The notes beneath the pieces were generated by a model. It was not told the DNA's origin, ran no database searches, and was given only the letters and a program-made list of their open reading frames with translations. The translations under genes and the position numbers were made by a program. From NCBI RefSeq assembly GCF_035084215.1, contig NC_090349.1:9176001-9240000 (forward strand): 64,000 bases of DNA, in the 5' to 3' direction. Positions 18,499-59,200 of this stretch are shown piece after piece. Position 1 is the stretch's first letter. Every line of letters starts with the position of its first letter. Source of the stretch: Heptranchias perlo. Its lineage: Eukaryota.

Positions 18499-18827
18499 TC
18501 ACTGGCAGGCTGATCTCTCGATGCTTTGCTTGAGTTGAGACCCGAGAGACTCATGTGTAACCCCGCAGGTGTACACTTGGTGTGAGTTCCAGTCGGTGGC
18601 GGACAGGGTCAGATAACTGCTCAGACTGTACGTCTGATCGGTGTCCCGTACGGCCTGAGTCGTCTGGACACCAGTGTCCGTGATCTTGCCGTCTACGCTC
18701 CACGATACTTCCACCGAACCCGGGAAAAAATTATTCACCAAACACACCAGGGTCGCCGCCTTTGCAGCAGAGATCTGATCGGACGCCGGCGGGAGGAGGG
18801 ATACCGAAGGGCTGGATGTCTCTCGAT
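18499..18827 (-). CDS. IGLC: Ig light-chain constant exon (lambda-type), cluster A
   Basis: C1-set domain PSVSLLPP..ATLVCLV..F.PG...V.W..YSLSSYLTL...W.SH.VYTC.VTH..ERSACQ with penultimate interchain Cys; acceptor ttcattgtag, phase 1. Confidence 0.95.
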
Positions 18828-22821: not shown

Positions 22822-22860
22822 TCAGAACAGTCAGCTTGGTGCCTCCACCGAAGTAAAGCA
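22822..22860 (-). CDS. IGLJ: Ig light-chain J segment (LYFGGGTKLTVL), unrearranged, cluster A
   Basis: FGXG motif, GTAAGT donor at 22821, directly abutting a perfect heptamer. Confidence 0.95.
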
Positions 22861-22888
22861 CACAGTGCTACAGACCCATTCAAAAAGA
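22861..22888 (+). promoter_or_regulatory. 12-bp-spacer recombination signal sequence of J
   Basis: CACAGTG (22861-22867) + 12 nt ctacagacccat + TCAAAAAGA (6/9 match to ACAAAAACC). Confidence 0.88.
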
Positions 22889-22980
22889 TCCTGCAACAGA
22901 AACTCGCAGAGTTAATTTATGACATTGAAACAAGCAAGTATCCTACTGGGCATAACTCTTTTATATGGTATTAGGGTATA

Positions 22981-23600: not shown

Positions 23601-23802
23601 ATAGTTCTGAAACGTGCTGAATACGAAGCTTGCTCAGTAATCTCCGAAAGCGTTAAATGGCAATATAATGCCTCACAGACAACATACCAAAAATTTCAGC
23701 AAATCCGGGTAAACAGTTTATGTCGACAACAGGATGGTAACTTTGGAAAATGGGGCGTTTCTTTAGTTGTCCCAGGAAAATCAGGAGTGGGGAGTGGGCG
23801 AC

Positions 23803-24174
23803 CAGTCCTGTGCAGGGTTTTTGTATCAGTCCTGTGCAGGGTTTATGTATCAGTCCTGTGCAGGGTTTTTGCATCAGTCCTGTACAGGGTTTATGTATCA
23901 GTCCTGTGCAGGGTTTATGTATCAGTCCTGTGCAGGGTTTTTGCATCAGTCCTGTACAGGGTTTATGTATCAGTCCTGTGCAGGGTTTATGTATCAGTCC
24001 TGTGCAGGGTTTATGTATCAGTCCTGTGCAGGGTTTATGTATCAGTCCTGTGCAGGGTTTATGTATCAGTCCTGTGCAGGGTTTATGTATCAGTCCTGTA
24101 CAGGGTTTATGTATCAGTCCTGTGCAGGGTTTATGTATCAGTCCTGTACACGGTTTTTGTATCAGTCCTGTGCA
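23803..24174. repeat. 24-bp tandem repeat (~15.5 units) built on the V-RSS spacer and nonamer
   Basis: Unit cagtcctgtgcagggtttatgtat; nonamer-type words every 24 nt from 23816 to 24152. Confidence 0.95.
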
Positions 24175-24190
24175 ATTTTCCTCCATCGTG
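24152..24190 (-). promoter_or_regulatory. 23-bp-spacer recombination signal sequence of V
   Basis: CACGATG (24190-24184) + exactly 23 nt + perfect ACAAAAACC (24160-24152), directly after YYCGWWKSSA. Confidence 0.92.
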
Positions 24191-24504
24191 CGCAGAGCTT
24201 TTCCACCAACCACAGTAATAGTCGGCGTCGTCCTCCGGTTGAACGCCGCTGATGGTTAAATATGCGGCGTTGGTTGCCGACTGACTCCTTCCAGAGAATC
24301 GATCAGGAATTCCGGTACCCCTGCTATCACGGTTAAGATCATGGTAGAGTAGAAATATAGGAGCATTCCCGGGTTTCTGCTGGTACCATCCTATGTCAGA
24401 GTTGCCCAAGGTATCACCAGACACGCTGCAACTTATTTTAACCGTTCCTTCCGGGGTGATAGATAACGATTGCGGTTGAGTTAATGTAATCTCCGCGTTT
24501 GAAC
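24191..24504 (-). CDS. IGLV: Ig light-chain V exon, unrearranged, cluster A
   Basis: Open frame SNAEITLTQPQSLSITPEGTVKISCSVSG..WYQQKPGNAP..GIPDRFSG..YLTISGVQPEDDADYYC; acceptor ttttatag. Confidence 0.95.
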
Positions 24505-24626
24505 CTATAAAAAGATCGAGAAATATTAGAGGGTGAGCTTCAAATCATCAATAACGTCACTTTATATCTCTATACAACAAAACATTGTTCACAATGAATC
24601 CAGTCAAACGTTTCCTGAATACTTAC

Positions 24627-24675
24627 AGACTGCGCAAAGTATCAGCGTTGTGATGACACGGACCCACCCCGACAT
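24627..24675 (-). CDS. IGLV: Leader exon of cluster A (MSGWVRVITTLILCAV)
   Basis: 49-nt hydrophobic exon, GTAAGT donor, phase 1, in frame with the V exon. Confidence 0.9.
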
Positions 24676-24794
24676 TATGAATTGAGTTTGTCTCAGCAAC
24701 CTCGCCAGTTTGCAGGGAGAAGGTGTTGTCTACCAGGCTCCCCTGGTCTTATCAATGGTATGAATGAGGGCGGGTTACCACGTTGTCCTTAATT

Positions 24795-24802
24795 ATGCAA
24801 AT
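24795..24802 (-). promoter_or_regulatory. Ig light-chain promoter octamer ATTTGCAT (cluster A)
   Basis: Perfect octamer 120 nt upstream of the ATG in light-chain orientation; GATAAG TATA-like word near 24750. Confidence 0.9.
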
Positions 24803-25669
24803 GAACGCTGACGTTACAAATCCCAGTTGAGCACCTATGATCGTGTTCAGGCCTTTACGCCACAAGACTTCCAAACTGCAGATGGCGATATTGGATAACA
24901 GGACCGATCTATATTGTGATGTTGTGCATCACAATCAAGATTTGTTAATGTTAAGTACAGGGACGTGCTGAAATTGCTGATTGTGTAAACTATGTAAGTC
25001 ATAATTTTTGACAAAACTCAGTAGGGTATATATTTTTGATCTTTCCTTCTACACAGGCCACATGTAAGCATTAGGAAGCAAAATTAATCAGTATTTGCGC
25101 CTTCTCTAAAGACACTTGTCCTAAATGTGCAACAGATAACAACAATCTTCATACACTTAGAAATCAATCCGCAAAAATTCAGCTACATTGCTACAAACTA
25201 TAGCTTGATGATATTTTATCTTTCCAATTAAATAACTTTTTATGAAGAATTTAAAGATGTTAGCCCATTATGGTTTATTTGAACCGTTTCTGCCTGGTAC
25301 ATTTACGCGAAGAAGTGTCAGTAATGCTCTTCGCTGAAAATAAAACGATGCTTATTGCCATAAGATGATATGAATCGATTCCCTACAAATTAGGAAACGA
25401 TTACTTGACCGTAAACCGATTGTTGGCACAAGGATCACATCCTAACGAGGATGTAATTAATTGTATCAGGCGGCTCTTGTTGACCTTTGAGCGATAGGGA
25501 CGTATTTTGATGAACCAATAAGGGTGACACTGGGTTGCACCAGGGTCACCAGACAAGAATGAGCGCTACTTTTAGGGCACCACTAATAAAAGAAGAAATC
25601 AAATTAAAAGAACCACAGCACAAGCAAAACAACCCCAACAAAAGCAAAGGTAACCTTACCAACTAAATC

Positions 25670-31599: not shown

Positions 31600-32330
31600 A
31601 AATCAGCGACTGGCAACTTGGTGCTTTTACCGAATGCTAACTTCATAACTAAATCAGAGCATTTCTAGAGGTGTTTGCAAGTGTCTTCAGCAAAAGCTGC
31701 GAGTGGATGATCCTACTTAGCCTCCTCCTGAGAACCCCACCATCATAGATATCATTGTCCACCTAAATCGGTTCACTCCATGTGAGATTAAGAAGTGTCT
31801 AACTGCACTAGACACATCAAAGACTATAGGCCCTGATAACAGCTGGAAACCTATACAGTTGAGCTAGCTGTTCCCCTAGCCAAGCTCTTCCAGTACAAAT
31901 AATGATATTTTAGATGATGTCTGAGGTATGCCCTTTCCAGAAATAAACATAATTAATCTAACAGAGCCAATTTACTGTCCTATCGGCTGATTCCCAATCA
32001 TCGGTAAAGTGTTGGAAGGAGCCATTAATAGTTCCATCTAGCAACACCTATTCAACAATAATCGGCTCATCATGCTCACTTTAGGTTCCACCAAAACTAC
32101 ACAGCTACAGACTCCATCACAGCCTTGATGCAGCAATAGCCGGATGCAAGAGGAGTCGTAAAAATAGCTGCCCTCGACATCAAGGCCGCATTCCACTATG
32201 TATGGCACCAAAGAGCTCAGGCAAAACCTAACTCAAGGGAATCAAAGAGAAAACCCTCCGGTGGTTGTAGTCATACGTGATACAAAGGAAGGTGGTTGTG
32301 GTTGTTAGAGACCAGTCATCAGAGCTTGTC
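31600..32330 (+). mobile_element. Old degraded LINE fragment, paralogous to ~47780-48730
   Basis: Similar to 5900-6600 (gattaagaagtg.., ccaagctcttccagtac, gacatcaaggccgcatt); present in both duplicated blocks. Confidence 0.7.
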
Positions 32331-32854: not shown

Positions 32855-33160
32855 GTTCTGCACTATAGGTCTCAGCCCTTCACCTAGTTCTGCACTATGG
32901 GTCTCAGCCCTTTCCCTAGTTCTACACTATGTGTCTCAGCCCTTTACCAAGTTCTGCGCTAAGGGTCACAGCTCTTTACCTGGTTCTGCATTATGTGTCT
33001 CAGCCCTTTACCTAGTTCTACACTACGGATCTCAGTCCTTTACCTAACTCTGCATTAGGCGTCTCAGCCCTTCCCCTGGTTCTGTATTATGTTTCTCAGC
33101 TCTTTAGTTCTGCACTATGCATCTCAGCCGTTTACCTAGTTCTGCATTATGGGTCTGCAT
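32855..33160. repeat. Degenerate 32-bp minisatellite (~9 units) upstream of pseudogene B
   Basis: Unit agttctgcactatgggtctcagccctttacct; paralog of 50258-51199. Confidence 0.85.
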
Positions 33161-33611: not shown

Positions 33612-35046
33612 AAGAACATAGAAGATAAGAAATGGAAGCAGGAATAGGCCATACCGCCCCTCGAACCTGCTCCATCATTCAATCAGATCATGGCTGAATT
33701 TCGACCTCAACTCCACTTTCCTGCCCAATCCCCATATCCCATGATGCCCCTAGATTTCAAAAATCCATCGATCTCAGCTTTGAATATATTCAATGACTCA
33801 ACATCCACAGCCTTCTGGGATAGAGAATTCCAAAGATTCACAAGCCTCTGCATGAAGAAATTCCTCCTCATCTCAGTCTTGAATGGCCAACCCCTTATCC
33901 TGCGACCATGCCCTCTAGTTCTAGACTGTCTAGCCAGGGGAAACAATCTCTCAGCATCTGTCAAGCCCCCTCATAATCTTATATGTTTCAATGAGATCAG
34001 CTCTCATTCTTCTAAGCTCCAGAGAGAATAGGCCCATTCTACTCATAACTCAACCCTCTCTAGTGAACCTTCGTTGCATTACCTCCAAGGCAAGTATATC
34101 CTTCCTTAGATAAGGAGACCAAAACTGTATGCAGGACTCCAGGTGAGGTCTCACTAAAGCCCTGAACAACAGTAGTAAGACTTCCTTACTCTTGTACTCC
34201 AACCCCCTTGCAATAAAGGCCAACATGCCATTTGCTTTCCTAATTGCCTGCTGTATCTGCATACTAACTTATTGTGTTACTTGTATGAGGACACCTAAGT
34301 CTCTCTGAAAACCAACATTTAATAGTTTCTCACCATTTAAAAAATATTCTGTTTTCCTATGCTTCCTACCAAAGTGAATAACCTCACATTTCCCACATTA
34401 TACTCCATCTGCCACCTACTTGCCCACTCAATTAATCTGTCTCTATCCCTTTACAGACTCTTTGTGTCCTCCTTACAGCTTACTTTCCCACCTAGCTTTG
34501 TATCATCAGCAAACTTGTATACATCATACTCGGTCCCTTCATCTAATTCATTAATATAGATTGTAAATGGCTGAGGCCCAAGCACTGATCCTTGCGGCAC
34601 CCCACGAGTTACAGCCTGCCAACCTGAGAATGACCCATTTATCCCTACTCCCTGTTTTCTGTCCTTTAATCAATCCTTTATCAATGCTATTACCCCAACC
34701 CCATGAGTCCTTACCTTGTGTAACAACCTTTTATGTGGCATCTTATTGAATGCCTTTTGAAAATCCAAATATGTTACATCCACTGGTTCCCCTTTATCTA
34801 CTCAGCTAGTTACATCCTCAAAAAACTCTAATAAATTTGTCAAACATGAATTCCCTTTCATAAAACCATGCTGACTCTGCCTAATCATATTATGATTTTC
34901 TAAGTGTCCTGTTACCACTTCCTTAATAATGGATTCCAGCATTTTCCCGACCACCTATGTCAGGCTAACTGGCCTGTTTTCTCTCTCCCTCCCTTCTTGA
35001 ATAGCGGGGTAATATTTGCTACCTTCCAGTCCACTGGGACCGTTCC
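33612..35046 (-). mobile_element. CR1 LINE inserted between the promoter and leader of B
   Basis: CR1 RT and 3' fragments; AGAT duplication at 33608-33611 and 35047-35050; empty site in D near 51650. Confidence 0.9.
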
Positions 35047-35120: not shown

Positions 35121-35634
35121 ATGTCTGAGTGAGTCCCTGATGCCGTAGTACTGATATTTTTTATGTCGGGTAAATATGGTACGCAAGTTTGATTGCGGGT
35201 TGGGATCGCTGTGAATAACGATTTATTGCACAGTATTAGCTAGTGACTGAAGTGTGTGAAGCTCACATCTCTTCTTTTCATAGGATCAATCGCGCAGATT
35301 ACATTAAGCCAACCAGTATCTGTCCACTGCCCCAGGACGAAACGTCGAAATAAGTTGTACAGTGACCGGAATCAGCTTGGCAAAGCTGCTGTATTCTGGT
35401 ACCAAAAATCTGCGAATGTTCTTCAGTATATTCTGTACCATAATGCCCACACTGTAAGCAGAAGCTCAGGTATTCCAGATCGATTCTCCGGAAGATGTAG
35501 CTCGTCAACCAACGCTGGATATGTAACCATCAGTCAGGTATAATCGGAAGTTGAGGCGAACTAATACTGCTCTGCGTGGATTGGCTCCATTGATCCGTAC
35601 AACTTTGGAACAAGGACCAAGCTGACTTTTCCGA
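35121..35634 (+). pseudogene. IGLV: Germline-joined Ig light-chain L-VJ pseudogene B (paralog of D), no C exon
   Basis: Leader 35121-35169 with TGA at codon 4; VJ exon 35284-35634 with frameshifts and TAA stops; junction YCSAWIGSIDPYNFGTRTKLTF; no RSS. Confidence 0.92.
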
Positions 35635-37511: not shown

Positions 37512-38099
37512 TATGAATTTTCCTAAGTTCCCTGGCGTATTAGGCCCCTAAAACAGCAATTAGTGTGGTCGACACAGGAATCTGCAGGTTACAGACAGGG
37601 ATGTGAGGTCAGGAGATACAGTATTATTAAAGGGATGGAAGACAGCTTGCTTCAAATGTTACTGCTCCGGGTGGAATCTGGCAATAGGAACGCAAAATTA
37701 TCCGAAATTTTGGGACGATCCGAATAAATGTCAGAGAGTAAATGATCTCCACAAGGTGTGTAATAATACACCGGCAGTTTGTTCGGTTTTTTTTATTGCT
37801 TTGACTTCGGGTCGTTTTTTCATTTCATTGAGCTATTTTATAGGAACAAATGAAATAGCCTATGAACAGAGCGGGAGTGTGTGCTGGAATATTTCATAAC
37901 CTGTTTTCAATGAGAATTAGTGTTCGAAATATTTGGAGATTTAACTATTTTGTTTATAGAAATTTCCATTTTCAAGACACTGGGAGAAATTGCATAGGAT
38001 TTGTGCCGTCTTTCAGGAGTTTCCGCCGAAGTTACGGCAGACGAGTGGGAGAACCGCTTCGGATTACGTACCGATTACCCCAATTCTCTGTCTCCTACC

Positions 38100-39985
38100 T
38101 CCTAACCAGTTCCTTATCCATGCCAATAGGTTGCCTCTAATTGCAGGCACTTTAATTTTTGCTAACATTCACTTGTGTGGAAACTTATCCAATGCCTCCT
38201 GGAAGGCCATATAAATAACATCCATAGACATTCCCTTATCTACCATGTCAAAAAATTCAACTAGGTTGGTGAGAAATTACTTATCCTTTACAAATCCATG
38301 CTGGCTCTCTCTGATCAGTTCATGTTTGTCCAGGTGCTCAATCACTCTGTCCCTAGTGATAGATTCGAGTAACTTCCCCGCAGCAGACGTTAGGCTAACA
38401 GGCCTATAATTTCCTGGTTATTCTCTCCCAGCCTTCTTAAATAATGGAGCGACACTGACAATTTTCGAATCCTCAACAATTCCTTAATCAAGAGAGTTTT
38501 GGAAGATCATGACTAAAGCATCTGTAACTAAGCTGAATTTTCATTTCTAATTCGCTTGTTTTATTCCTTAAGCTACGTGTATTTGTGTACAGAACGATGA
38601 TTTGGGCTACAAATCCTACTCTGCCCTTTTGCCCTGATGTTGTTTTTCTCACACTTTTTAAACTTACCACACGTCTTGATTTTCATCACTTCTATTGTAT
38701 TATCAGCTATTTTGTTATTATTTCTCAAACCTCCCTTTCCTCTCCAAAGTCCTGGAATGTGTTCTTGCCTCCCAAATCCATGCCATCTTTCCCTCAATTC
38801 CATGTTTGAAACTCTCCAATTTGGTTTCTGCCCATACCACAGCAATGAAACAACCCTAATCAAAGTCACAAATGACATCTTATGTGACTATGACCATGAT
38901 GCACTATCCCTTCTCATCAATCTCGAACTGTCTGCAGCCTTTAACATGGTTGGTCATATCATCATCCTCCAACACCTTTCCCCCGTTGTCCAGCTCAGAG
39001 GGACCACCCTCGACTGGTTCCATTATTATCTATCCAGTAGTAGCCAGAGAATCTCCGGTAATGGCTTCTCTTCTCATCCCTACAATGTTACCTCTGGAAT
39101 CCCCCACGGCTTGTAAGGTGGGGGAAGGGGATGTTAATATCGAGGCCCATGGCTTCGGTCTTCCCAATATTTAATTGAAGGAAATTTCAGCTCGTCCAGG
39201 ACTGGATGTCGGACTAGCATTCTGACAACACAAAGGTAGTGGAGGGGTTGGTGAGGTATAGCATCAGTGTACATGTGAAACCTGATGTTGGGCTTTCGGA
39301 TTATGTCACAAGTGACAGCAGGTAGATGAGAAATAGGAGGAGCCAAGCATAGATCCTTGGGGGACTCCAGAGATAACAGTGCAGGGACAAGAAGAGAAGG
39401 CATTGCAAGGGACAGTCGGGCAGAGTGAGCATTGGAATTCGCATCGCTTAAAGACTTCCCACAGTTGCAGGGCTCCATAGATTGCACACACGTGGCAAGC
39501 AGAACACCCCGACCAGCCAGGAGCATTTGTGAACCACAAGGGCTTCCGGTCCATCAATGTTCTCCACCCATAGAAAGAAGTTCATGCAGGTCTGTGCACA
39601 GTTCCTTGGGATGCCTTCATACTGCAGCGGTCACATAGCCCCAAAATGTTCATAGCTGGGACAAACCTGACAGGATGGCGCTTGGGAACAAGGGATACCG
39701 GTTGCAACCGTGGCTCATGAGGGAGTATTGTGCACAGTTCTGGTCACCACATTACAGGAAGGATGTAATTGTTCTGGAGAGAGTGCAGAGAAGATTTACA
39801 AGAATGTTGCCAGGGCTTGAAAATTGCAGCAACTAGCAAATTTCAAGCCCTGGTAGAGGCAGGGACCCTCAACTCTTTTAAAAAGTACCTGGACTTGCAC
39901 CTAAAGTGCTGTAAGATGCAAGGCTACGGACCGGGTGCTGGAAGGTGGGACTAGAATGGGCACCTGGTTGTTCTATGGTTCTATG
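38100..39985. mobile_element. Patchwork of CR1, L2 and Harbinger-transposase fragments
   Basis: CR1 (~38100-38520), L2 (QFGFCPYHSNETTLIKVTNDI, ~38760-39420), Harbinger remnant FPQLQGSIDCTHVA (~39430-39720), CR1 3' end (~39720-39985). Confidence 0.7.
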
Positions 39986-41013
39986 GGAGGCTAGATTGAC
40001 GCCCATCCATGCGGGTAGAGCTATAAACTAGAATACTGATGGAAACATCTCTTTTGCTGCATTCCACGAATTATTTGGTATCAGTGTTAGGACAGGATTT
40101 TGATTTCAACCAAAAATTACAGGATTGTGTGTGAAAGTAACACGATAAACACAAAGGGATAGGATTTCCACGGAATTTTTCCCCTGATATCTTGGGGATA
40201 TCAGGGGAAATTATATATTACTTTAAAATTGCAACCGTAAAATCTCAGCAGACTTTTATATATCGGAGCTCCAACCAGTAAAATAAAACGGACGAGTGCC
40301 GACGTCAATGCGTCCAACAACGTATTGGAGAACGTATTGGGGGAATTTTCTGTCTGAGCTCTATATGTACCGCAATCCACCTCTTTATAAACGATTTCGT
40401 GACACATAGCGTACAGAAGACATCTTTCTACTGGTGAGAAACAGTATCGGTTATCGAAAGTAAACCATAAGCTGGGTATTAGGTTCGGGACATTATGAAT
40501 CTCCGAATAATTATTGAACTCGTCATTCGAAATTAATATCCCCCAATGATCGCGTTAAAAATTTACGGTGCACCAGTAATTAAAGGAGACGCCGTTATTT
40601 TCTCTCACTCTCTATCTGCTCGTCTCTCTCTTCCTCTCTGTCTCTCTCTATCTGTCTGTCTCTCTGTGTTTGATTTTGCATATTTGCTATTTGTGCGATA
40701 CTTTCAATTATGTTTTTAAACATACAATCTATGAAACATTTCTTTTGTTCGCTGTCTCTGCTCGAAGGGAGGAAATTAATCATAGCATATAACCCATCGT
40801 TTGCCTTACGCTTTCAAAACCTGATTGTTTTATATCACTAATAAGCGAATCACTGTTTAAACTTTGGTTGAGAACTACACCTCCAATTGTATTATCTGCT
40901 TCATATTATTGTAATAATCCAAATGAGAATTGATTTGACTATCTGCTGTATAGAAGGAGAAAAATATCCTGCCGAAGTGCTTGTACAGAATGCATCAAGT
41001 AAAAGTTACTTAT

Positions 41014-41410
41014 TCAGAACAGTCAGCTTGGTGCCTTTACCGAGGTAGAGCTGCGCCACAAACCACAGTAATAGTTGGCGGCGTCCTCCGATTGAACACC
41101 ACCGATGGTTAAATATACGGCGTTGGTTCATGACTGTTTCCTTCCAGAGAATCGATCTGGAATTCCGGAACGCTTGACCTCATGGTCAAGATCTTGATAG
41201 AGTAGAAATCGAGCAGCATTCCCGGGTTTCTGCTGGTACCATCCGATGTCAGAATTTCCCAAGGTACCACCAGACACGCTGCAGCTTATTTTAACCGATC
41301 GAGCAATTTTAGAGGGTGGACTTCAAATCATCAATAACGTCAGTTTATATCTCTATACAACAAAACATTGTTCACAATGCATCCATGATGACACGGACCC
41401 ACTCGGACAT
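41014..41410 (-). pseudogene. IGLV: Germline-joined Ig light-chain L-VJ pseudogene C (paralog of A), no C exon
   Basis: ISCSVSGGTLGNSDIGWYQQKPGN..GIPDRFSGRKQS*..NYYCGLWRSS fused out of frame to LGKGTKLTVL; J donor GT>AT; deletions remove the leader donor and FR1/acceptor; octamer mutated (plus-strand ATGCAAAC near 41512). Confidence 0.93.
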
Positions 41411-42209
41411 TATGAATTGAGTCAGAAACGTCGCCAGTTTGCACGGAGATCTGGTACCCCTTGTTTTATCAATGATATGGATGAGCGCGCATTACCACGT
41501 TGTCCTCAATTATGCAAACGAACGCTGACGTTACAGTTATTATTAAGAAGGATTAACAATCCTTGGTAGCATTAATAACACCAAACAGCAAGCATTTATG
41601 TCACTGTTACAAACCCCAATTGAGCATCTATGATCGTGTTCAGGCCTTTACACCACAAGATTTCCAAACTGGAGATGGCAACATTGGATTGTAGAACCGA
41701 TCTATATTGTGATGCTGTGCACCACACGCAAGATTTATTAATATTTAGTACAAGGACGTGCTGAAAACACTGATTGTGTAAAATGTGTAAATAAGTTCTC
41801 ATTTTTGACAAAACTCAGTAGGGACATATTTTTGACCTTTCCTTTTACACATGCCACATGTAACCATATGGGTGCAATTTTAATCAGCATTTCCGCCCTC
41901 TCTAAAGACACTGCTGTCCTAAATTTCCAATGATAACGATAATCTTCATACATTTAGAAATCAATCCGTAGAAAGTCAGCTACATTGCTACAAACTGTAG
42001 CTTGATGATATTTTATCTTTACAAGGAAATATTTTTTACGACGAATTTAAAGATGTTAGCCCATTACGGTGTATTTGAGCCGTCTCTGTGGACGCGTCAG
42101 TAAAGATCTTCGCTGAAAATAAAACGATGCTTATTACCATATGATATGAATCGATTCCCTACAAATTAGGAAACGATTATTTGGCTGTAAACCGAATATT
42201 GGCACAAAG

Positions 42210-43885
42210 ACCAAGACAGTAGAAATAATAATGGGGAATAAGGAAATGGCAGAGACATTAAACAAATATTTTGTATCCGTCAACACAAAAAACATACCGG
42301 AAATAGTGGGGAACCAAGGGTCTCATGAGAGTGAGGAACTTAAAGTAACTAAGGTTAGTAAAGAAAAGGTACTGGCGCAATTAATAGGACTAAAAGCTGA
42401 CAAATCCCCTGGACCTGATGGTCTATATCCTATGGTTCTAAAACAGGTGGATGAAGAGATAGTGGATGCATTGGTTTGATCTACCATAATTCCCTAGATT
42501 CTAGATAACTCCCATAGTGGATTGGAAGGTAGCAAATGTAACCCCGCTATTCAGGAAAGGTGGGAGAGAGAAAACATGGAGCTATAGGCCAGTTAGCCTG
42601 ATATCAGTAGTTAGGAAAATGCTAGAATTATTATTAAGGAAGTGGTAACAGGGCATTTGAAAATGATAATATGATTGGGCAGAGTCAACACGATTTTATG
42701 AAAGGGAAATCGTGTTAAACAAATCTATTAGAGTTTTTTGAGGGTGTAACTAGCAAGGTAGATAAGGGGGAACCAGTGGATGTAGTATATTTGGATTTTC
42801 AAAAGGCATTCGATAAGGTGCCACAACAGACGTTGTTACACAAGATTAGAGCTCATGGGATTGGGGGTAATATATTAACAAGGATTGAGGATTGGTTAAC
42901 GGACAGAAAACAGAGAGTAGGAATAAACATGTCATTTTTGGGTTGGCGGATGAGGGGACCGAGTGTAATGTATCCAATTTTGTTGATGATGCAAATCTAG
43001 GTGGGAAAGTACACAAAGAGGCTGCAAAGAGATATAGACAGGTTAAGTGACTGGGCGAGACGGTGGCAGATGGGGTATAATGTAGGGAAATGTGAAATTA
43101 TCCACTTTGGTAGGAAGAATAGAAAAGCAGAGTAATTTTAAGAAGTGAGAAACTAAGAAATGTTGGTATTCAGAGGGTTTTCGGTGTCCTTGTACACGAA
43201 TCACAGAAAGTTAACAAGCAGGTAAAGCAAGCAATTAGGAAGGCAAATAGTATGTTAGCCATTATTGCAAGCGAGTTGGAGTATAAGAGTAAGGAGGTCT
43301 TGGTGCAATTATATAGGGCACTTGTGAGACTACACCTGGAGTACAGTTTTGGTCTCCTTACCTAAGGAGGGATGTTCTTGCTTTAAAGGGGCAACAAAGG
43401 TTCACTAGATTGATTCCTGGGATGAGAAAGTTGTCCTATGAGGAGAGATTGAGTAGAATGGCCCTATATTCTCTGGAATTTAGAAGAATGAAAGGTGACC
43501 TCATTGAAACGTATACAATTCATAGAGGGCTTGACAGGGTAGATGCTGAGAGGCTGTTTCCCTGGCTGGAGAGTCTAGAACTAGGGTCATAGTCTACCAA
43601 GATAAGGAGTTGGCCATTTAGGACCGAGATGAGGAAACATTTCTTCATTCAGAGGGTTGTGAATTTTTGTCAGTCTCTATCCCAAAAGGCTAGGGATGCT
43701 CAGTCATTGAGTCGAAGACTGAGATCGATAGTAATTTGGACACTAAGGGAATCAAGGGATATGGGGTTATGGCGAGAAAGTGGAGTTGAGGTAAAAGATC
43801 AGCCATGATCTTATCGAATGATGGAGCAGGCTCGAGGAGTCATATGGCCTACTCCTGCTCCTATTTCTTATTTTCTTATGTTCTA
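42210..43885 (+). mobile_element. CR1 LINE, 5'-truncated and degraded
   Basis: KSPGPDG and VVYLDFQKAFDKVP fragments, CR1 tail; absent at the paralogous site near 25430. Confidence 0.88.
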
Positions 43886-44384
43886 ACATGGATGTAATTA
43901 ATGGTATCAGACTGCTCTTGTTGACTTTTGAGTGATAGGGGCCTATTTTGATGAACTAATAAGGGTGACATTGGGTTACCCCAAAGTCACCAAACAAGAA
44001 TGAGCGCTACTTTTAGGGGACCACTCATAGAAGAAGAAAACATATGGTCCAATCAAACTAAGGGAAGCTCAACATAAGCAAAACAAGTTCCAACTAAAGC
44101 AAAGAGAACCTTCACTACTAAATCATAATATTGTTATCAGCGTCTATAAGACACTCCATGCCCTGTGGTGCCCACCGTTCGCAAAAGGTCTCAAGCATAC
44201 CAACAGACACCAGGCCATAGTAGAGTTTAAAAGACACCGATATGTCTTAATCACCTGAAAACAATATCTTAAAGTGAAAGCTTTAATCTAATTTATACCA
44301 CACATTGATGACTGTTTTCTTCAATGCAAACATCAGATACTTCAGCAGGAAAAATGAAACATCTGACATTGACATTATTTCTGG

Positions 44385-46655: not shown

Positions 46656-47457
46656 GGGTCCAGCCTGTGTCCAATACAGTCATGATGCCTTATGTATCAC
46701 CCCCTACCCACCCAGAGCCATCTAACCTCTTGGGACTCACGAAAAATCAGATAAAAACCCAGGCCAACTATGGGAAAAAAGCTGGAAAATTCCTCTCGGA
46801 TGCCTTTGGATGATCGAAACTAGTCCAGGAGACAATATTGATCCTGCCTAATATTACAGGGTACCTCCTTCGTGTAAGAAATGATCTACTCCCCAGCCAG
46901 ATACAGGTCCAGTTGTCTTGTAGTTAAAGAGTGAATAAGTGTTCACCTGACAAGCCGGCAATCTGTTCCTCAGGTCTATTGTTCACTGGGAAAAGAAGCA
47001 CTTATGTGCTTTATTCGCTCAGGAGGGAGAAGTGGGTGGGGTAGACTACCTGCCTGGGGAGAGGGTGAGCTGCTAATTGGGAATGGCTGCAGGATCGATG
47101 GAAAAAATGGGTCAGTCCTTGGTGGACTTCAAAGTCACAGACTGATACGAGTCGTAGTGTACTCTTTGCTTAGGAAAGTGGATAGCCATGCATGCGGCAA
47201 GAATAATAATTAGCCCACCTGGGGCTACAGCAAAACATGTTGAATAAATCTTAGAAGGGATATTTAAGGTGACAGGAAGGTACCGAGTGGTATTAGTCCA
47301 TGTAGGGGCAAATAACACAGGTAGAAATAATATAATGGCCTTTAAAGCCACAGACATGAGGATCACTTCAAAGCCCGTTGATAGTAAAAGTAATTCAATG
47401 TTCTCTGGTAGACTTTTGGCGTTTGGCAAAGGAAGTGAGTTCACCAATAAAAAAGAT

Positions 47458-47778
47458 AAGAACAAAAGAAACAGAAGCAGGAGTAGGCCATATGGCCGCT
47501 CGAGCCTACTGCACCATTCAATAAGATCATGGTTGATCTTCGACCTCAATTCCACTTTCCCGCTCGATCCCCATATCCCTCAATTCCCTTAGAGTCCAAA
47601 AATCAATCGATCTCAGCCTTGAATATACTCAACGACTGAGCATCCACAGCCCTCTGGGGTAGAGAATTCCAAAGATTCACAACCCTGTGAGTGAAGAAAT
47701 TCCTCCTCATCTCAGTCCTAAATGGCTGACCCCTTATCTTAAGACTATGCCCCCCAGTTCTAGACTCTCCAACCAAGA
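47458..47778 (-). mobile_element. CR1 3' fragment
   Basis: RRNFFTHRVVNLWNSLP plus tail; absent from the paralogous site near 31590. Confidence 0.85.
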
Positions 47779-50257
47779 GTAAATCAAAGACTGGCAACTT
47801 GGTGATTGAACCTAATGCTACCTTCATAACTAAATCAGAACATTTCTAGAGGTGTTTGCAAGTGCCTTCAGCCAAAGCTGCAGAGTGGATGATCCTACTT
47901 AGCCACCCCCTGAGAACCCCGCCACCATACATATCATTGTCCATTTAAATCGATTCACTCCATGTGAGATTAAGAAGTGGCAAAGACTATAGGCCCTGAT
48001 AACATCATAATTGCAATGCTGAAAACCTATGCACCAGAGCTAGCTGTCCCCCTAGTCAAGCTCTTCCAGTATAAATAATGAGATTTTGCAAGATGGCCGA
48101 GTTAAGTGCTGTCCAGAACAAACACAGAATAAATCTAACGCAACCAATTTACTGTCCTGTTAGCTGCCTCCCAATCATCAATAAAGTTTTGGAAGGAGCC
48201 ATTAATAGTTCCATCAAGGAACGCCTATTCAACAATTGCTGGCTCAAAATGCTCAGTTTAGGTTCCAACTGAACCATTCAGCTCTAGACTGCATCACTGC
48301 ATTGATGCAGCGACAGCTGAATGCAAGAGAAGATGTGAAAATCGCTGTCCTTGACACGAAGATAGTATTTTACTAAGCATAGCACCAAAGAGCCCTAGCA
48401 AAACCTAAGTGAAGGGCGTCAAAGGAAAACTACTCCAGTGGCTGGAGTCACACCTGACGCCAAGGAAGGTGATTGTGATTCTTGGAGTCCAGCCATCATA
48501 GTCACAGGACATCATTGCAGGTCTTCCTCAGGAAAGCATCTTCAGCCCCCCATCTTCAGCTGCTTCATCTATGGCCTTCCCTCTGTCATAAGGTCAGGAA
48601 TGAGACTGTTCGCTGCTGATTCTTTAGTGTTCATCTCCATCGGAATTCCGATAATGATGGAGCCCACATTAGCCTACATCAGGATCTGGATAACATCCAG
48701 GCTTGGGCTGACACGGCAGGTAACATTTGCAGGATAGAAAACAACTAATACCCATTACAGGCATTATACCAGTTGCTTGCCCCGGGGATTGGTGCTGGGA
48801 CCATAAGAACATAAGAAATGGGAGCAGGAGAAGGCCATACGGCCCTCGATATTTGTAAGCCATACGGCCGCTCGAGCCTGCTCCGCCACTCAATAAAACT
48901 ACTACTGCTTCTAGTTTACATCAATGACATGGTCTCAGAAACGCAGTGCAAGTTGGTACAATTTGAACATGATCAATGGAATTGGAAGAGGCAGCTCTTA
49001 AAGTACAGAATGAACTGTGTTAGTTTTAGACGTCTGAGTGAGGAGGAAAACTGGGGTAGCTTGGCCTTTTCAGCCTTCAAAGTAGACATCTGATAGGTGA
49101 TTTTATAGCGATATTTAAGATAGTGAACTATCTGGAAATGATAAAGCTGGAAAATTACTTTAAATTAAATTGAAAGTAGGATAATAGGCCACAGATTCAA
49201 CAAGATGTATTTACACATCGACTTTAACGTGAAAAAGCCACAAGGCGAATCCCAGAGGCATAATACAAATATTGAACACCAAGTCAAAGAAGTAGGTTTT
49301 AGGAGGTGTGACCAAACGTTTGGTCAAAGAGGTAGGTTTTCAGGAAAGGCTTAAAGGAGGAGTGGGAGATGGAGACGTGGAAGGGGTTAGGGAGAGAATT
49401 CAAAAGCGCAGGGCTTAGGCGTCTGAAGGCACGACTGCCAATTGTAGGAGGAGGGTACAAGATAGGGAGTGGCAAGGCCATGAAGGTATATAAATTACCT
49501 GGAGAAGCTATTATTACAGCTTGCAATGCTAAGTCAATTACGCAGCATTTGCTGGACAATAGATAGTCCAATTTGGGATATTTCTATTTGATGCGTCAAG
49601 TAATAGACGCTAACAGATGTGGACTAATTGGGGGTAATGTTGACTTTGTGCGATAGTGCAAAATGTGTGATAGCGAATCGGCAGCCTGTTTTACATTTCT
49701 CTCCATTTTTATTTCCATTGACTTCACACCTAGCCTGCTCCACTCTCTACAGCACTTGAATGTTGTGGTATGCCATTCAGTCCTTGCACAAGCACATGAC
49801 TAGAACAGCCTATAAACCACACTGACTTCTGCTAATTCCACACCAGTAGGCGCATCTCCCTGCGTAACACTGTCATTTGAGATAAGTGTTTCTTCCTGTT
49901 AAATTCTATGGAAGCCGATTGTTAGATGTCCAGTAATATTTGCTTTAAGTGTAGAGTATTCAATCCACACCCTCAACCTCGTCATCAAAGCAGTGCGTTG
50001 GAATAGTAACCTAGTAGGACTTATGCAAAATACCGTAAATTCCTTATTCATTTCTAAAGGACCATGTAATTTCAAGTACAAACCAAAATAAATCTCTAGT
50101 TTATATTGGCTCCTTTTAGGCATATGCGCAGTGTAGAATGTCATCAGACATTTAACTGGAGAACGCAATCCACAACTGCTCTAAGAGTGGATCAAATCCC
50201 CTTCCGCAACAAGTCGCAAATCAATTGTGCTTTAAGTTCCTCCGTCATAATTGACCG

Positions 50258-51199
50258 AATTCTCCACTATGGGTCTCAGCCCTTCACCTAATTCTCCACT
50301 AATGGGTCTCAGCCCTTCACCTAATTCTCCACTAATGGGTCTCAGCCCTTCACCTAATTCGCCACTATGGGTCTCAGCCCTTCACCTAATTCGCCACTAT
50401 GGGTCTCAGCCCTTCACCTAATTCTCCACTAATGGGTCTCAGCCCTTCACCTAATTCGCCACTATGGGTCTCAGCCCTTCACCTAATTCTCCACTAATGG
50501 GTCTCAGCCCTTCACCTAATTCGCCACTATGGGTCTCAGCCCTTCACCTAATTCGCCACTATGGGTCTCAGCCCTTCACCTAATTCTCCACTAATGGGTC
50601 TCAGCCCTTCACCTAATTCGCCACTATGGGTCTCAGCCCTTCACCTAATTCTCCACTAATGGGTCTCAGCCCTTCACCTAATTCGCCACTATGGGTCTCA
50701 GCCCTTCACCTAATTCGCCACTATGGGTCTCAGCCCTTCACCTAATTCGCCACTATGGGTCTCAGCCCTTCACCTAATTCGCCACTATGGGTCTCAGCCC
50801 TTCACCTAATTCTCCACTATGGGTCTCAGCCCTTCACCTAATTCTCCACTAATGGGTCTCAGCCCTTCACCTAATTCTCCACTAATGGGTCTCAGCCCTT
50901 CACCTAATTCTCCACTATGGGTCTCAGCCCTTCACCTAATTCTCCACTATGGGTCTCAGCCCTTCACCTAATTCTCCACTAATGGGTCTCAGCCCTTCAC
51001 CTAATTCTCCACTAATGGGTCTCAGCCCTTCACCTAATTCTCCACTAATGGGTCTCAGCCCTTCACCTAATTCTCCACTAATGGGTCTCAGCCCTTCACC
51101 TAATTCTCCACTAATGGGTCTCAGCCCTTCACCTAATTCTCCACTATGGGTCTCAGCCCTTCACCTAATTCGCCACGATGGGTCTCAGCCCTTCACCTA
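50258..51199. repeat. Homogeneous 32/33-bp minisatellite (~29 units) upstream of gene D
   Basis: Unit aattc(t/g)ccacta(a)tgggtctcagcccttcacct, head-to-tail with no spacers. Confidence 0.95.
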
Positions 51200-51725: not shown

Positions 51726-51774
51726 ATGTCTGAGTGGCTTGTTGTTGTCACCGTGCTGATACTTTTTATGTCAG
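51726..51774 (+). CDS. IGLV: Leader exon of gene D (MSEWLVVVTVLILFMS)
   Basis: 49-nt hydrophobic exon, GTAAAT donor, phase 1. Confidence 0.9.
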
Positions 51775-51878
51775 GTAAATATTCGAACATTTGATTGCAG
51801 GTTGGAATCGCTGTGAATAACGATTTATTGCGCAGTATTAGATAGTGTCTGAAGCTCATACATCTATTCTTTTCACAG

Positions 51879-52235
51879 GCTCAAACGCTGAGGTTACATT
51901 AAGCCAACCACAGTCTCTTTCCACTGCTCTGGGAGGAAACGTCGAAATAAGTTGTACAGTCACCGGAGTCAGCTTGGGAAACGCAGCTGTATCCTGGTAC
52001 CAGCAAAAATCTGGGAATGTTCCTCGGTATATTCTGTACCATAATGCCCAAACTGTAAGCAGAGGCTCCGGCACTCCAGATCGATTCTCCGGAAGAAGTA
52101 GCTCGTCAACCAACGCTGGATATTTAACCATCAGTCAGGTGCAATCGGAGGATGAGGCGAACTATTACTGCGGTGTATGGATTAGCTCCATCAATGCTTT
52201 TGCCTTCGGGACAGGCACCAAGCTGACTTGTCTGA
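51879..52235 (+). CDS. IGLV: Germline-joined VJ exon of Ig light chain D, in frame
   Basis: EVTLSQPQSLS..ISC..WYQQKSG..PDRFSG..EDEANYYCGVWISSINAFAFGTGTKLTCL, GTAAGT donor, no RSS; L+VJ+C = 49+357+329 = 735 nt (244 aa). Confidence 0.95.
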
Positions 52236-56294: not shown

Positions 56295-59200
56295 ATAAGA
56301 ACATAAGAAAGAGGAGCAGGAGTAGGCCATACCGCCCCTCGAGCCAGCTCCGCCATTCAATCAGATCATGGCTGATCTTCTACAGCAACTCCACATTCCC
56401 GCCTGATCCCCACATCCTTTGATTCCCCGAGAGTCCAAAAATCTATCCATCTCAGCCTTGAATATATTCAAAGACTCAGCATCCACAGCCCTCTAGGGTA
56501 GAGAATTCCAAAAATTCACAACCCTCTGCATGAAGTAATTCCTCCTTATCTCAGTCTTGAATGGCCGACCCCTTATCCTGCGACTATGCCCCCTAGTTCT
56601 AGTCTCTCTAGCCAGGGGAAACAATCTCTCAGCATCTACCCCATCAAGTCCACTCATAATCTTATATGTTTCAATGAGATCACCTCTCATTCTTCTAAAC
56701 TCTAGAGAGTAAAGGCCCATTTTACTCAACCTCTCTTCATAGGAAAACCCTCTCATCCCAGGAATTAATCTAGTGAACCTTCATTGCACTGCCTCTAAGG
56801 CAAGTATATCCTTCCTTAGATAAGGAGACCAAAACCATATGCAGTTCTCCAGGTGAGGTCTCACTAAAGCTTCCCTACTCTTGTACTCCAACCCCTTGTA
56901 ATAAAGACCAACATGCCATTTGCTTTCCTAATTGTCTGCTGTACCTGCATACTAACTTTTTGTGTTTCTTGTATGAGGACACCTAAGTCTCTCCAGGAAC
57001 AGCAACATTTAATAGTTTCTCACCATTTAAAAAATATTCTGTTTTTCTATTCTTCCTACCAAAGTGGATAACCTCCCATTTCCCCACATTATACTCCATC
57101 TGCCACCTTCTTGCCCACTCACTTAATCTGTTTATATCCCTTTGCAGACTCTTTGTGTCCTCCTCACAGCTTACTTTCCCACCTAGCTTTGTGTCATCAG
57201 CAAACATGGATACATTACACTCGGTCCCTTCATTTAAGTCATTAATATGGATTGTAAATAGCTGAGACCCAAGCACCAATCTTGCGGCACTCCACTAGTT
57301 ACAGCCTGCCAACCTGAGAATGACCCATTTATCTCTACTCTCTGTTTTCTGTCCTTCAACCAATCCTCTGTCCATGCTATTACCCCCAACCCCATGAGCC
57401 CTTACCTTGTGCAACAACCTTTTATGTGGCACCTTATCCAATGCCTTTTGAAAATCCAAATATACTACATCCACTGGTTCCCATTTATCTACCCTGCTAG
57501 TTACATCCACAAAAAACTCTAATAAATTTGTCAAACACGATTTCCCTTTCATAAAACCATGCTGACTCTGCCTAATCATATTATGATTTTCAAAGTGCCC
57601 TGTTACCACTTCTTTAATAATGGATTCCAGCATTTTCCCGATGACGGATGTCAGGCTAATTGGCCTGTAGTTCCCTGTTTTCTCTCTCCCTCCCTTCTTG
57701 AACAGCGGGGTAACATTTGTTACATTCCAGTCCATTGGGACCGTTCCAGAATCTAGATAATTTTGGAAGATCATAACCAATGCATCCATTATCTCTTCAG
57801 CCACCTCTTTTAGAATCCTAGGATATAGTCCATCAGGTCCAGGGGATTTGTTGGCTTTTCGTCCCATTAGTTTGTCCAGTACTTTTTCTCTAATGATATT
57901 AATTGTTTTAAGTTCTTCATGCTCATTCACCCCTTGGTTCCCCACTATTTTTGGTATGCTTTTTGTGTCCTCTACTGTGAAGACAGATACAAAATATTTG
58001 TTTAACGCCTCTGCCATTTCCTAATTCCCCATTATAATTTCTCCTGTCACAGCCTCATAGGGACCAACATTTACTTTTGTTACTCTCTTCCTTTTTACAT
58101 ACTTGTAGAAACTCTTACAATTCGTTTTTATATTTCTTGCTAGTTTACTTTCATATTCTATTTTCTCCCCTTTCATCAATTTTTTGGTCGTCCTTTGTTG
58201 GTTTCTAAAACTCTCCCAGTCCCAGGCTTATTATTCTTCTTGGCAACATTGTAGGCCTCTTCTTTCAATCTAATACTCTCCTTAACTTCTTTAGTTAGCC
58301 AGGGGTGGATCACTTTTTCCGTGGAGTTTTTATTTCTCAATGGAATGTATATTTGTTGAGAATATTGAAATATTTATGTAAATGTTTGCCATTGCTTTTC
58401 AGCTGTCAAAGCCTTTAATTTAATTTCCTTATCTACCTTTGACAACTCGCCCTTCATACATGTAATTGGCTTTATTTAAGTTTAAGTCTCTAGTTTCTGA
58501 CTTAAGTATGTTACTTTCAAACTCAATGTGAAATTCTATCATATTATGATCACTCTTCCCCAGAGGTTCTTTTACTGTGAGATTACTAATTAACCCTATG
58601 ACGTTAATAATACAAGATCTAAAATAACCTGTTCCCTGGTTGTTTCCATGAAGTATTGCTCTAGGAAACCGTCTCAAATGCATTCCATTAACTCATCTTC
58701 CAAACTACCTTTGCCAATTTGATTTGCCCAGTCTATATGCAGATTAAAGTCCCCCCATGATGACTGCATTTTCTCTGTTAGAAGCTCCTATTATTTCATG
58801 ATTAATACTCTGTCCAACAATATTGCTGCTATTAGGGAGCTGGTAAACTACTCCCACCACTGTTTTCTGCCCCTTGTTATTTCTAATTTCCACCCATATT
58901 GATTCTACTTCCTGATCTTCTGAGCCAAGATCCTTTCTCACCAAAGTCCTTATGTCATCCTTTATTGTTGGGGCTACATCCCCCCCCCCCCCTTTTCCAT
59001 TCTGCCTGTCTTTTCTAAATGTCATGTACCCTGGAATATTTAGTTCCCAACCTTGGTCATTTTGCAACCATGTCTCTGTAATGGCTATTAGGTCAAACCC
59101 ATTTATCTCTATTTGTGTAATTAATTCATCTGTCTTGTTATGAACGTACAGCTCTGTGCATTCAGGTAAAGAGCCTTTAATTTTGACTTTTTACCATTTT

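What the first reader, a model, noticed from the sequence alone, without database searches (positions are those of the whole stretch)
41014..41075. Before-and-after snapshot of germline V(D)J joining: C is the joined, out-of-frame twin of split cluster A
Seen: the A V ends AGCTCT-GCG|heptamer and the A J begins heptamer|TGCTTT-ACTTCGGT. Paralog C reads AGCTCT-ACCTCGGT. Both RSSs and the whole interval are gone, 3 nt of V and ~6 nt of J are trimmed, there are no N additions, and the join falls in the register of the imperfect microhomology GCTCT/GCTTT, leaving J out of frame. The leader intron and J-C intron are retained, so it is not a retrocopy. Established: this is the signature of a RAG coding joint made without TdT, and germline joining in sharks is attributed to RAG activity in germ cells. 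Inference: joining happened after the block duplication and may itself have killed the gene.
Basis: partly seen in the sequence, partly recalled or inferred. Interest (0 to 1): 0.82.

Follow-up and report, generated by a model that had tools for sequence, protein, structure and literature searches.

The report
Germline-joined dead shark lambda light-chain gene
In this shark antibody light-chain locus, one decayed gene copy has its V and J pieces already fused, out of frame, in the animal's inherited DNA, while its sister copy still keeps them apart; this is a new lambda-type example of germline V-J joining, which is already known in sharks.

Summary
On the minus strand, cluster C reads ...TGT GGT TTG TGG CGC AGC TCT|ACC TCG GTA.... 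The V-J join lies between window positions 41047 and 41046. Against its closest in-window paralog, the split cluster A, C lacks 1339 bp: 3 nt of V end, both recombination signals, the interval and 6 nt of J start. The leader intron, at least 1.3 kb of upstream flank and about 800 bp of J-C intron are kept, so C is not a retrocopy. Short-read DNA contigs cross the join at single-copy depth, so it is not a rare somatic clone.

The window comes from Heptranchias perlo, and the genes are lambda-type. A RAG-type germline coding joint is the best reading, as in nurse-shark kappa genes (Lee et al. 2000).

The "snapshot" is faded: A and C belong to a roughly 20-kb tandem duplication that has diverged about 19% (K about 0.22), so the exact trimming and the lack of N additions cannot be read off. 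The join probably did not kill the gene. C has no constant exon, perhaps since the duplication, and has evolved almost neutrally. A later 7-nt deletion from an in-frame join is not excluded.

Verdict: a new member of a known kind, of moderate interest.

The parts
41047..41297 (-). Cluster C V-region remnant, from the end of FR1 to the trimmed V end. It is 86% identical to A 24194-24444 and carries an in-frame TGA at 41130-41128.
41046..41047 (-). V-J joint of cluster C. Base 41047 is the last V-matching base (A 24194). Base 41046 is the first J-matching base (A 22854). There is no recombination signal and no interval between them.
   Evidence: DNA contigs span it at single-copy depth
41014..41046 (-). 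Cluster C J segment (ACCTCGGTAAAGGCACCAAGCTGACTGTTCTGA). It is out of frame with V, has F>L in the FGxG motif, and its splice donor at 41013-41012 is AT instead of GT.
40215..41013 (-). Retained J-C intron of cluster C. It aligns to A just downstream of J, and 40215-40834 matches A 20359-20984 at 78%. No constant exon follows.
41298..41410 (-). Cluster C leader remnant (ATG at 41410-41408, exon remnant to 41386) and leader-intron remnant (41385-41298). A 48-bp and a 70-bp deletion relative to A flank the intron.
41411..42207 (-). Cluster C upstream and promoter flank, homologous to A 24651-25431 (80-84%). The octamer is mutated to GTTTGCAT at 41519-41512. Homology resumes at 43883-44039 beyond a transposable-element insertion.
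24191..24675 (-). Cluster A (split paralog): leader exon 24675-24627, leader intron, and intact V exon 24504-24191.
24152..24190 (-). Cluster A V recombination signal: CACGATG, a 23-nt spacer, ACAAAAACC.
22861..22888 (-). Cluster A J recombination signal: TCTTTTTGA, a 12-nt spacer, CACTGTG.
22822..22860 (-). Cluster A J segment (codes for LYFGGGTKLTVL) with an intact GT splice donor.
18499..18827 (-). Cluster A constant exon. Cluster C has no counterpart.
35121..35634 (+). Cluster D: a germline-joined VJ pseudogene with a frameshift and stop codons. It is the paralog of E, has the same CDR3 length, and has no constant exon. It lies tail-to-tail with C.
51726..52235 (+). Cluster E: leader plus an in-frame germline-joined VJ exon. 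With the constant exon at 60387-60715, its coding sequence equals protein P0003 of Heptranchias perlo.
38059..39984 (.). Junction between the two duplicated units. It is filled with transposable-element sequence, and the constant exons of D and C would be expected here.
   Evidence: (very high repeat depth)

Best explanation
The window is a lambda-type immunoglobulin light-chain locus of the sevengill shark Heptranchias perlo.

An ancestral head-to-head pair was duplicated in tandem as a unit of roughly 20 kb. The pair was a split 'A-type' cluster with 23/12 recombination signals and an already joined 'E-type' cluster. The result is A(-) D(+) | C(-) E(+). A and E kept constant exons. D and C, tail-to-tail at the duplication junction, have none. 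Either the breakpoints lay in the two J-C introns, or one later deletion removed both exons.

After the duplication, the V and J of copy C were fused in the germ line. The deletion starts 3 nt inside the V coding end and stops 6 nt inside the J coding end. It removes both signals and everything between them. That is the footprint of a RAG coding joint with nibbling and little or no added sequence. Because C was already, or soon became, non-functional, the out-of-frame product was neutral. It then drifted to fixation and kept decaying.

Shown: the sequence anatomy, the unit duplication, the retained introns and flank, the missing constant exon, and full-depth presence of the join in reads.

Inferred: RAG as the enzyme, action in the germ line, the order of lesions, and the exact trimming.
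For: - Junction anatomy and A's intact signals.
- Five J-like matches against 0.03 expected by chance.
- Colinear homology blocks covering 6.3 kb at 80.7% identity, with the offset between units ranging from about 15.9 to 22.0 kb.
- D and E are both joined, with equal CDR3 length.
- Only two constant exons are in the window, those of A and E.
- D-E intron homology runs to about 96 nt before the expected exon. C-A intron homology stops about 1.35 kb before it. Transposable-element sequence lies between.
- A versus C V exon: 35 differences in 243 nt, split 11/11/13 by codon position, dN/dS 0.62, dS 0.22.
- DNA contigs span the joint with no differences at the same depth as single-copy flanks, and no joint or loose end was listed there.
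- 23/12 is the lambda-type arrangement of recombination signals (PMC5985310).
- Germline joining by RAG-like activity, with little TdT signature and with joined pseudogenes, is documented for nurse-shark NS4 (kappa) genes (PMC2193156).
Against: - All reads come from one animal of unknown tissue, so 'germline' rests on depth and on the gene's many fixed lesions.
- With K about 0.22, roughly 3 substitutions are expected in the 14 nt around the joint. Trimming, P or N nucleotides and microhomology use therefore cannot be established.
- Protein trees do not resolve whether C is sister to A.
- Gene conversion is active in this locus and could blur the relationships.
Confidence: 0.72

Rival explanations
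1. C was first joined in frame, in the canonical way seen in A-type lambda genes of other sharks and rays. It became out of frame later, through a 7-nt deletion at the junction during pseudogene decay. The canonical CDR3 is GWWxSxA-(L/F)(Y/H)-FGGG, which corresponds to an untrimmed V end plus J minus 2 nt.
For: - Gene models from about 10 elasmobranch species share that CDR3 length and pattern.
- Deleting GCGCTTT from ...AGCTCT GCG CTT TAC TTC... gives exactly C's sequence (direct reading).
- C has suffered other deletions, of 48 and 70 bp.
- Trees do not exclude C being orthologous to those joined genes.
Against: - It needs an extra event.
- The only small indel in about 290 nt of V plus J would have to fall exactly at the V-J border, which I estimate at about 3% a priori.
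- dN/dS of 0.62 and even codon-position spread argue against a long functional life for C.
- C lacks a constant exon.
Confidence: 0.13
2. The V-J interval was lost through an ordinary deletion (replication slippage or end joining at the GCTCT/GCTTT microhomology) without RAG.
For: - There is imperfect 5-nt homology at both edges.
- C carries other unrelated deletions.
Against: - Both ends fall within 3 and 6 nt of the coding/heptamer borders and remove both signals cleanly.
- The exact overlap is only 1 nt.
- The same outcome is documented repeatedly for shark immunoglobulin genes and is attributed to RAG (PMC2193156).
Confidence: 0.06
3. C's joined V-J stretch was copied in by gene conversion from another joined A-type lambda gene elsewhere in the genome. 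On this reading the join did not happen at this locus.
For: Gene conversion is evident here. The constant exons of A and E differ at 2 of 324 nt, and the homology stops abruptly at the exon borders.
Against: - Identity to A is similar in the V exon, the leader intron, the upstream flank and the J-C intron (78-86%), with no patch of different age.
- No second full-length H. perlo protein with this constant domain appeared in the protein search.
Confidence: 0.05
4. The joint is a somatic rearrangement or an assembly artefact.
For: The source tissue is unknown, and there is only one individual.
Against: - Contigs from three DNA runs cross the joint at the same depth as the single-copy flanks.
- C has a mutated octamer, a broken leader, no FR1 and no constant exon, so it is an unlikely substrate for rearrangement and clonal expansion in a lymphocyte.
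Confidence: 0.02

Closest known systems
Germline-joined NS4 (kappa, type III) light-chain genes of the nurse shark (Lee, Fitch, Flajnik and Hsu 2000, PMC2193156)
   Same: - Split and joined paralogs occur in one light-chain family.
- The joined copies lack both recombination signals and the interval, and keep the leader intron and flanks.
- The joints show nibbling and little sign of TdT.
- The direction is inferred from irreversibility.
- Some joined copies are pseudogenes. R19 needs 1 nt removed from CDR3 to restore the frame, and R6 is heavily disrupted.
   Different: - The isotype here is lambda, with 23/12 signals.
- The species is a hexanchiform shark.
- The pair is far more diverged: about 81-86% identity against up to 99% for R4/S31 and R7/S10.
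- The joined copy lacks a constant exon and lies inside a duplicated two-gene unit.
- No evidence from multiple animals is available.
Germline-joined lambda (type II / NS3) genes of cartilaginous fish (reviews PMC4279169 and PMC5192425; Rast et al. 1994 and Hohman et al. 1993, as cited there)
   Same: - Same isotype.
- Clusters E and D, and the A-type gene models of other elasmobranchs, are of this kind. They appear as contiguous VJ, functional in most species.
   Different: - The reviews state that all lambda genes are joined in the species studied. Here a split lambda cluster (A) sits beside the joined ones.
- C is a non-functional, out-of-frame join rather than an expressed pre-joined gene.
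Somatic RAG coding joints made without TdT (for example fetal or neonatal repertoires; sterlet IgL1 junctions without N nucleotides, PMC5985310)
   Same: A deletion bounded by the heptamer borders, a few nucleotides nibbled from each coding end, no obvious added nucleotides, and possible use of short homology.
   Different: The event is fixed in inherited DNA, it is old, and its fine structure is blurred by later substitutions.
Processed retropseudogene of a rearranged transcript
   Same: V and J are contiguous.
   Different: The leader intron, the J-C intron and at least 1.3 kb of untranscribed upstream flank are retained. This was tested here and the retrocopy criterion is not met.

Membership tests
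Germline-joined Ig gene of cartilaginous fish (product of germline V-J recombination) | V and J coding sequences are contiguous in genomic DNA, with both recombination signals and the interval absent. | tested here: met
   the joint lies at 41047/41046, and 1339 bp of A have no counterpart in C.
Germline-joined Ig gene of cartilaginous fish (product of germline V-J recombination) | Genomic context is retained (leader intron, J-C intron, promoter flank), so the copy is not reverse-transcribed. | tested here: met
Germline-joined Ig gene of cartilaginous fish (product of germline V-J recombination) | A related split gene exists whose coding ends, next to its signals, account for the joint. | tested here: met
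   Cluster A has 23/12 signals. Caveat: A and C are about 14-22% diverged.
Germline-joined Ig gene of cartilaginous fish (product of germline V-J recombination) | The joined form is present in non-lymphoid or germ-cell DNA and in several individuals. | tested here: inconclusive
   Contigs cross the joint at full single-copy depth in three DNA runs. All runs come from one sample of unknown tissue.
Germline-joined Ig gene of cartilaginous fish (product of germline V-J recombination) | The joint shows coding-joint processing (nibbling, P nucleotides) rather than arbitrary breakpoints. | tested here: inconclusive
   The breakpoints lie 3 and 6 nt from the heptamer borders. Fine detail cannot be recovered at K about 0.22.
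Germline-joined Ig gene of cartilaginous fish (product of germline V-J recombination) | RAG1/RAG2 are active in germ cells. | not testable with these tools
   No gonad expression data were accessible.
Immunoglobulin lambda (type II / NS3) isotype | 23-nt spacer signal at V and 12-nt spacer signal at J. | tested here: met
   for cluster A. 23/12 is called the lambda type in PMC5985310.
Immunoglobulin lambda (type II / NS3) isotype | The constant and J regions group with lambda chains. | tested here: inconclusive
   J codes for FGGGTKLTVL. The best constant-domain hits are named 'lambda-1 light chain-like' in about 15 elasmobranchs, but those are automatic names. No phylogeny with reference type II sequences was possible.
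Processed retropseudogene | No introns and no upstream flank homology. | tested here: not met

The most novel reading that the evidence does not exclude
RAG cut and joined, in the germ line, a promoter-bearing V-J fragment that had no constant exon and was already dead. If so, C is an unselected record of germline recombinase activity. Together with the intact split cluster A, it would show that the supposedly 'all-joined' lambda genes of cartilaginous fish arise recurrently from a split lambda precursor that still survives in Hexanchiformes.
Probability: 0.35. Interest if true: 0.6.

Novelty: new member of a known kind. Interest (0 to 1): 0.42.

Why it matters
Germline V(D)J joining in sharks is the main natural evidence that the RAG recombinase still reshapes inherited genomes. 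Known split/joined pairs come mostly from nurse-shark kappa (NS4) genes.

This locus adds a lambda-type pair in an early-branching shark order. Here the joined copy was almost certainly not under selection, so its out-of-frame joint reflects what the recombinase produces rather than what selection keeps.

The locus also supports, as context, the separate observation that a split lambda cluster exists. The reviews say all cartilaginous-fish lambda genes are pre-joined.

The value is limited by the age of the duplication and by the lack of data from other animals and species.

Tried and rejected
- **Ortholog search with C's V piece.** A protein word search with the 55-aa intact piece of C's V found nothing, so no orthologs of C were found this way.
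- **PDB sequence searches with A's constant and V exons.** The hits were ranked by multi-domain scores and said nothing about isotype.
- **Sequencing runs.** Only one sample holds the stretch, so the join could not be confirmed in several animals. The likely RNA runs hold A-type V sequence but nothing specific to C.
- **Protein trees.** I built trees of the V domains: A-type, E-type, and the two types concatenated per unit. The A-type and E-type clades are solid (100/100). The positions of A, C and D among shark orders are unresolved. No constraint was rejected by the AU test (p = 0.09-0.48).
- **The 'J-like' match at 31612-31634.** It has 3 mismatches, lies inside repeat sequence and has no V beside it. 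I rejected it as a chance hit.
- **C as the original unsplit state and A as a later insertion.** I considered this and rejected it. 23/12 split lambda genes are ancestral in jawed vertebrates (PMC5985310). C also lacks 9 coding nucleotides that A has.
- **Spliced V-J-C model.** I built none. Exons were searched separately by reference.
- None occurred.

Full report
**1. What is in the window**

The window carries four immunoglobulin light-chain V/J units. A J-consensus scan gave 5 hits against 0.03 expected by chance. One hit, at 31612-31634, has 3 mismatches, lies inside repeat sequence and has no V next to it, so it is a chance match.

The four real units are as follows.

| Cluster | Strand | State | Main coordinates |
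|---|---|---|---|
| A | minus | split, intact | leader 24675-24627; V exon 24504-24191; J 22860-22822; constant exon 18827-18499 |
| D | plus | joined VJ, frameshift and stops | 35121-35634 |
| C | minus | joined VJ, the finding | about 41410-41014 |
| E | plus | joined VJ, in frame | 51726-52235; constant exon 60387-60715 |

Cluster A's V signal is CACGATG, a 23-nt spacer, then ACAAAAACC. Its J signal is TCTTTTTGA, a 12-nt spacer, then CACTGTG. Its J codes for LYFGGGTKLTVL.

Cluster E's product is 100% identical to a protein that NCBI names 'immunoglobulin lambda-1 light chain-like [Heptranchias perlo]' (P0003). This identifies the species as the sharpnose sevengill shark.

The 23/12 signal arrangement is the lambda type (PMC5985310). 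The J motif and the automatic names of the closest constant domains, from about 15 elasmobranch species, agree with that.

**2. Check of the observation**

- C's V matches A up to 41047, which corresponds to A 24194, 3 nt before A's heptamer.
- C's J matches A from 41046, which corresponds to A 22854, 6 nt after A's heptamer.
- The 1339 bp of A in between have no counterpart in C. This stretch holds GCG, both signals, a 24-bp tandem array, a LINE fragment and TGCTTT.
- Reading from the Cys codon (41067-41065), J is out of frame.
- The exact overlap between the two ends is a single T. The GCTCT/GCTTT homology is imperfect.

C is not a retrocopy. It aligns to A across the leader intron. It also aligns to at least 0.6 kb of contiguous upstream flank (41606-42207 against 24813-25431, 84%). 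That alignment resumes beyond a transposable-element insertion (43883-44039 against 25442-25598). It aligns to about 800 bp of J-C intron.

C carries further lesions:

- a 48-bp deletion that removes the leader's 3' end and its splice donor;
- a 70-bp deletion that removes the splice acceptor and most of FR1;
- an in-frame TGA at 41130-41128;
- a J splice donor changed from GT to AT;
- F changed to L in the FGxG motif;
- an octamer changed from ATTTGCAT to GTTTGCAT;
- no constant exon. A tblastn search finds only the exons of A and E.

**3. Is the join in the animal's DNA?**

Only one sample in the public runs holds this stretch. Contigs from three DNA runs of that sample cross the joint with at least 300 nt on each side and no differences. 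Their depth is 50.5 in X1 and 8.9 in X2 and X3. The neighbouring single-copy contigs have depths of 40.9-44.2 and 7.6-8.0. No joint or loose end was listed at the V-J border.

A somatic joint in a polyclonal lymphocyte population would be a tiny minority of reads. So the joined form is the constitutional state of this animal. Confirmation in other animals or tissues was not possible.

A run guessed to be RNA holds abundant A-type V sequence. One loose end is an exact match to A's CDR2. That run holds nothing specific to C.

**4. The wider structure: a duplicated two-gene unit**

A self-comparison shows a chain of colinear, same-orientation blocks. It links 20.4-37.8 kb with 40.2-59.8 kb. The blocks cover 6.3 kb at 80.7% identity, which gives a Jukes-Cantor K of about 0.22.

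So the locus is a tandem duplication of about 20 kb of a head-to-head pair:

- unit 1 = A (split) plus D (joined);
- unit 2 = C (joined) plus E (joined).

D and E have the same CDR3 length and a recognisably shared junction. Gene models from other sharks and rays carry the same E-type junction pattern. The E-type was therefore already joined when the unit was duplicated.

A is still split, and a joined gene cannot regain its signals. The A-type was therefore split at the duplication, and C's join happened afterwards on C's own lineage. It is the same logic as in Lee et al. 2000 (PMC2193156).

**5. Why 'the join killed the gene' is doubtful**

D and C lie tail-to-tail at the boundary between the two units, and neither has a constant exon.

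- D's homology to E's J-C intron runs to about 96 nt before the point where the exon should start (38058 corresponds to 60293).
- C's homology to A's intron stops about 1.35 kb before the exon.
- The 1.9 kb in between is transposable-element sequence.

The simplest account is a tandem duplication whose breakpoints lay inside the two J-C introns. In that case D and C were born without constant exons. The alternative is a whole-unit duplication followed by one deletion that removed both exons.

In either case C's death does not need the out-of-frame joint. The 35 A-C differences in 243 nt of V are spread 11/11/13 over the three codon positions, with dN/dS 0.62 and dS 0.22. That is what one constrained lineage plus one neutral lineage would give. 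It suggests that C was non-functional for most of its history.

**6. Why the 'snapshot' is faded**

At K about 0.22, roughly three substitutions are expected in the 14 nt around the joint. Visible changes do flank it: AAA to CGC just upstream, and T to C and GG to AA in J.

The reading '3 nt and 6 nt trimmed, no N additions, microhomology-guided' is therefore reasonable but cannot be verified.

Protein trees of the V domains separate A-type and E-type clades with 100/100 support. They leave A, C and D unresolved among the shark orders. A concatenated tree of the two units does not join them (AU p = 0.09 for their monophyly). No alternative placement is rejected. The duplication may therefore be about as old as the divergence of the shark orders.

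For comparison, the nurse-shark split/joined pairs are up to 99% identical (PMC2193156).

**7. The rival that matters**

A-type lambda gene models of about 10 elasmobranch species share a CDR3 of constant length, GWWxSxA-(L/F)(Y/H)-FGGG. This equals A's untrimmed V end plus A's J minus 2 nt. C's junction is 7 nt shorter.

A canonical in-frame join followed by loss of GCGCTTT would give exactly C's sequence.

I rate it lower, at about 0.13, for three reasons:

- it needs an extra event;
- the only small indel in about 290 nt would have to fall exactly on the V-J border;
- C looks neutral for most of its life.

Only orthologs from other species can settle it.

**8. Other rivals**

- **Non-RAG deletion.** This is unlikely, because both ends sit within a few nucleotides of the heptamer borders.
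- **Gene conversion from an unseen joined paralog.** This is possible in principle. The constant exons of A and E differ at only 2 of 324 nt, with abrupt homology borders. However, identity to A is uniform across exon, introns and flanks.
- **Somatic or assembly artefact.** The read depth contradicts this.

**9. Comparison with what is known**

The phenomenon is established. Lee et al. 2000 described split and joined NS4 (kappa) paralogs in the nurse shark. They described joints with little TdT signature and possible P nucleotides, and at least five independent germline joinings. They also described joined pseudogenes, including R19, whose CDR3 is 1 nt out of frame.

What is new here is the isotype and the lineage. 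[quoted passage not shown] Here a split lambda cluster and a joined paralog sit 17 kb apart. The split cluster itself is the subject of another first-stage note.

The likely 'dead on arrival' status of C is also of some interest. It would make the joint an unselected product of germline recombination.

**10. Verdict**

- C is a new member of a known kind.
- Interest is moderate (0.42).

**11. Limits**

- Data come from one animal only.
- The isotype assignment rests on signal orientation, the J motif and automatic protein names.
Exons were searched one by one, by reference.

Noticed in passing
window 22822-24802: Cluster A looks like an intact, split lambda-type cluster, with V-23 and J-12 recombination signals, open V, J and constant exons, and good splice sites. 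Two reviews say that all lambda (type II) genes of cartilaginous fish studied so far are germline-joined. A run guessed to be RNA contains sequence identical to A's CDR2.
   Followed up: partly
window 23803-24174: A 24-bp unit is repeated 15.5 times directly after A's V signal. The unit consists of the 3' half of the 23-nt spacer, the nonamer and 3 nt, so there are about 15 nonamer-like copies next to the real one. This array is absent from C because the whole interval is gone.
   Followed up: partly
window 18499-18827 and 60387-60715: The constant exons of A and E differ at only 2 synonymous positions in 324 nt. Homology stops abruptly about 5 nt before the exon and 17 nt after the stop codon. 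The V regions of the two clusters are only about 73% identical. This looks like recent gene conversion, that is, concerted evolution of the constant exons. Within-species similarity of the constant regions is also visible in Narcine and Pristiophorus proteins.
   Followed up: partly
window 18400-60800: There is a tandem duplication of about 20 kb of a head-to-head two-gene unit: A plus D, and C plus E. One gene of each unit is still intact (A and E). The two dead copies (D and C) face each other tail-to-tail without constant exons.
   Followed up: yes
window 39985-40119: An inverted copy (78%) of A-intron sequence 20180-20314 sits next to the end of the C/A intron homology. It may be a trace of a complex breakpoint at the duplication junction.
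   Followed up: no
window 32855-33156 and 50254-51199: A 32-bp tandem array lies in the intergenic region of both duplicated units. It has 9.6 copies in unit 1 and has expanded to 29 copies at 97% identity in unit 2.
   Followed up: no
proteins P0004, P0007, P0008, P0013, P0016, P0018, P0019, P0021, P0022: A-type lambda gene models from sharks and rays share a CDR3 of fixed length (GWWxSxA-(L/F)(Y/H)-FGGG). P0009, P0010 and P0012 share a shorter one (xGFGGG). This suggests old joined genes, or repeated selection for the same joint. It could not be checked on DNA.
   Followed up: no
window 22982-23600 (also 33620-34214, 43258-43879, 47456-47787, 56295-56864): A LINE 3'-end fragment is inserted in A's V-J interval. 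Copies of the same element are scattered through the locus.
   Followed up: no
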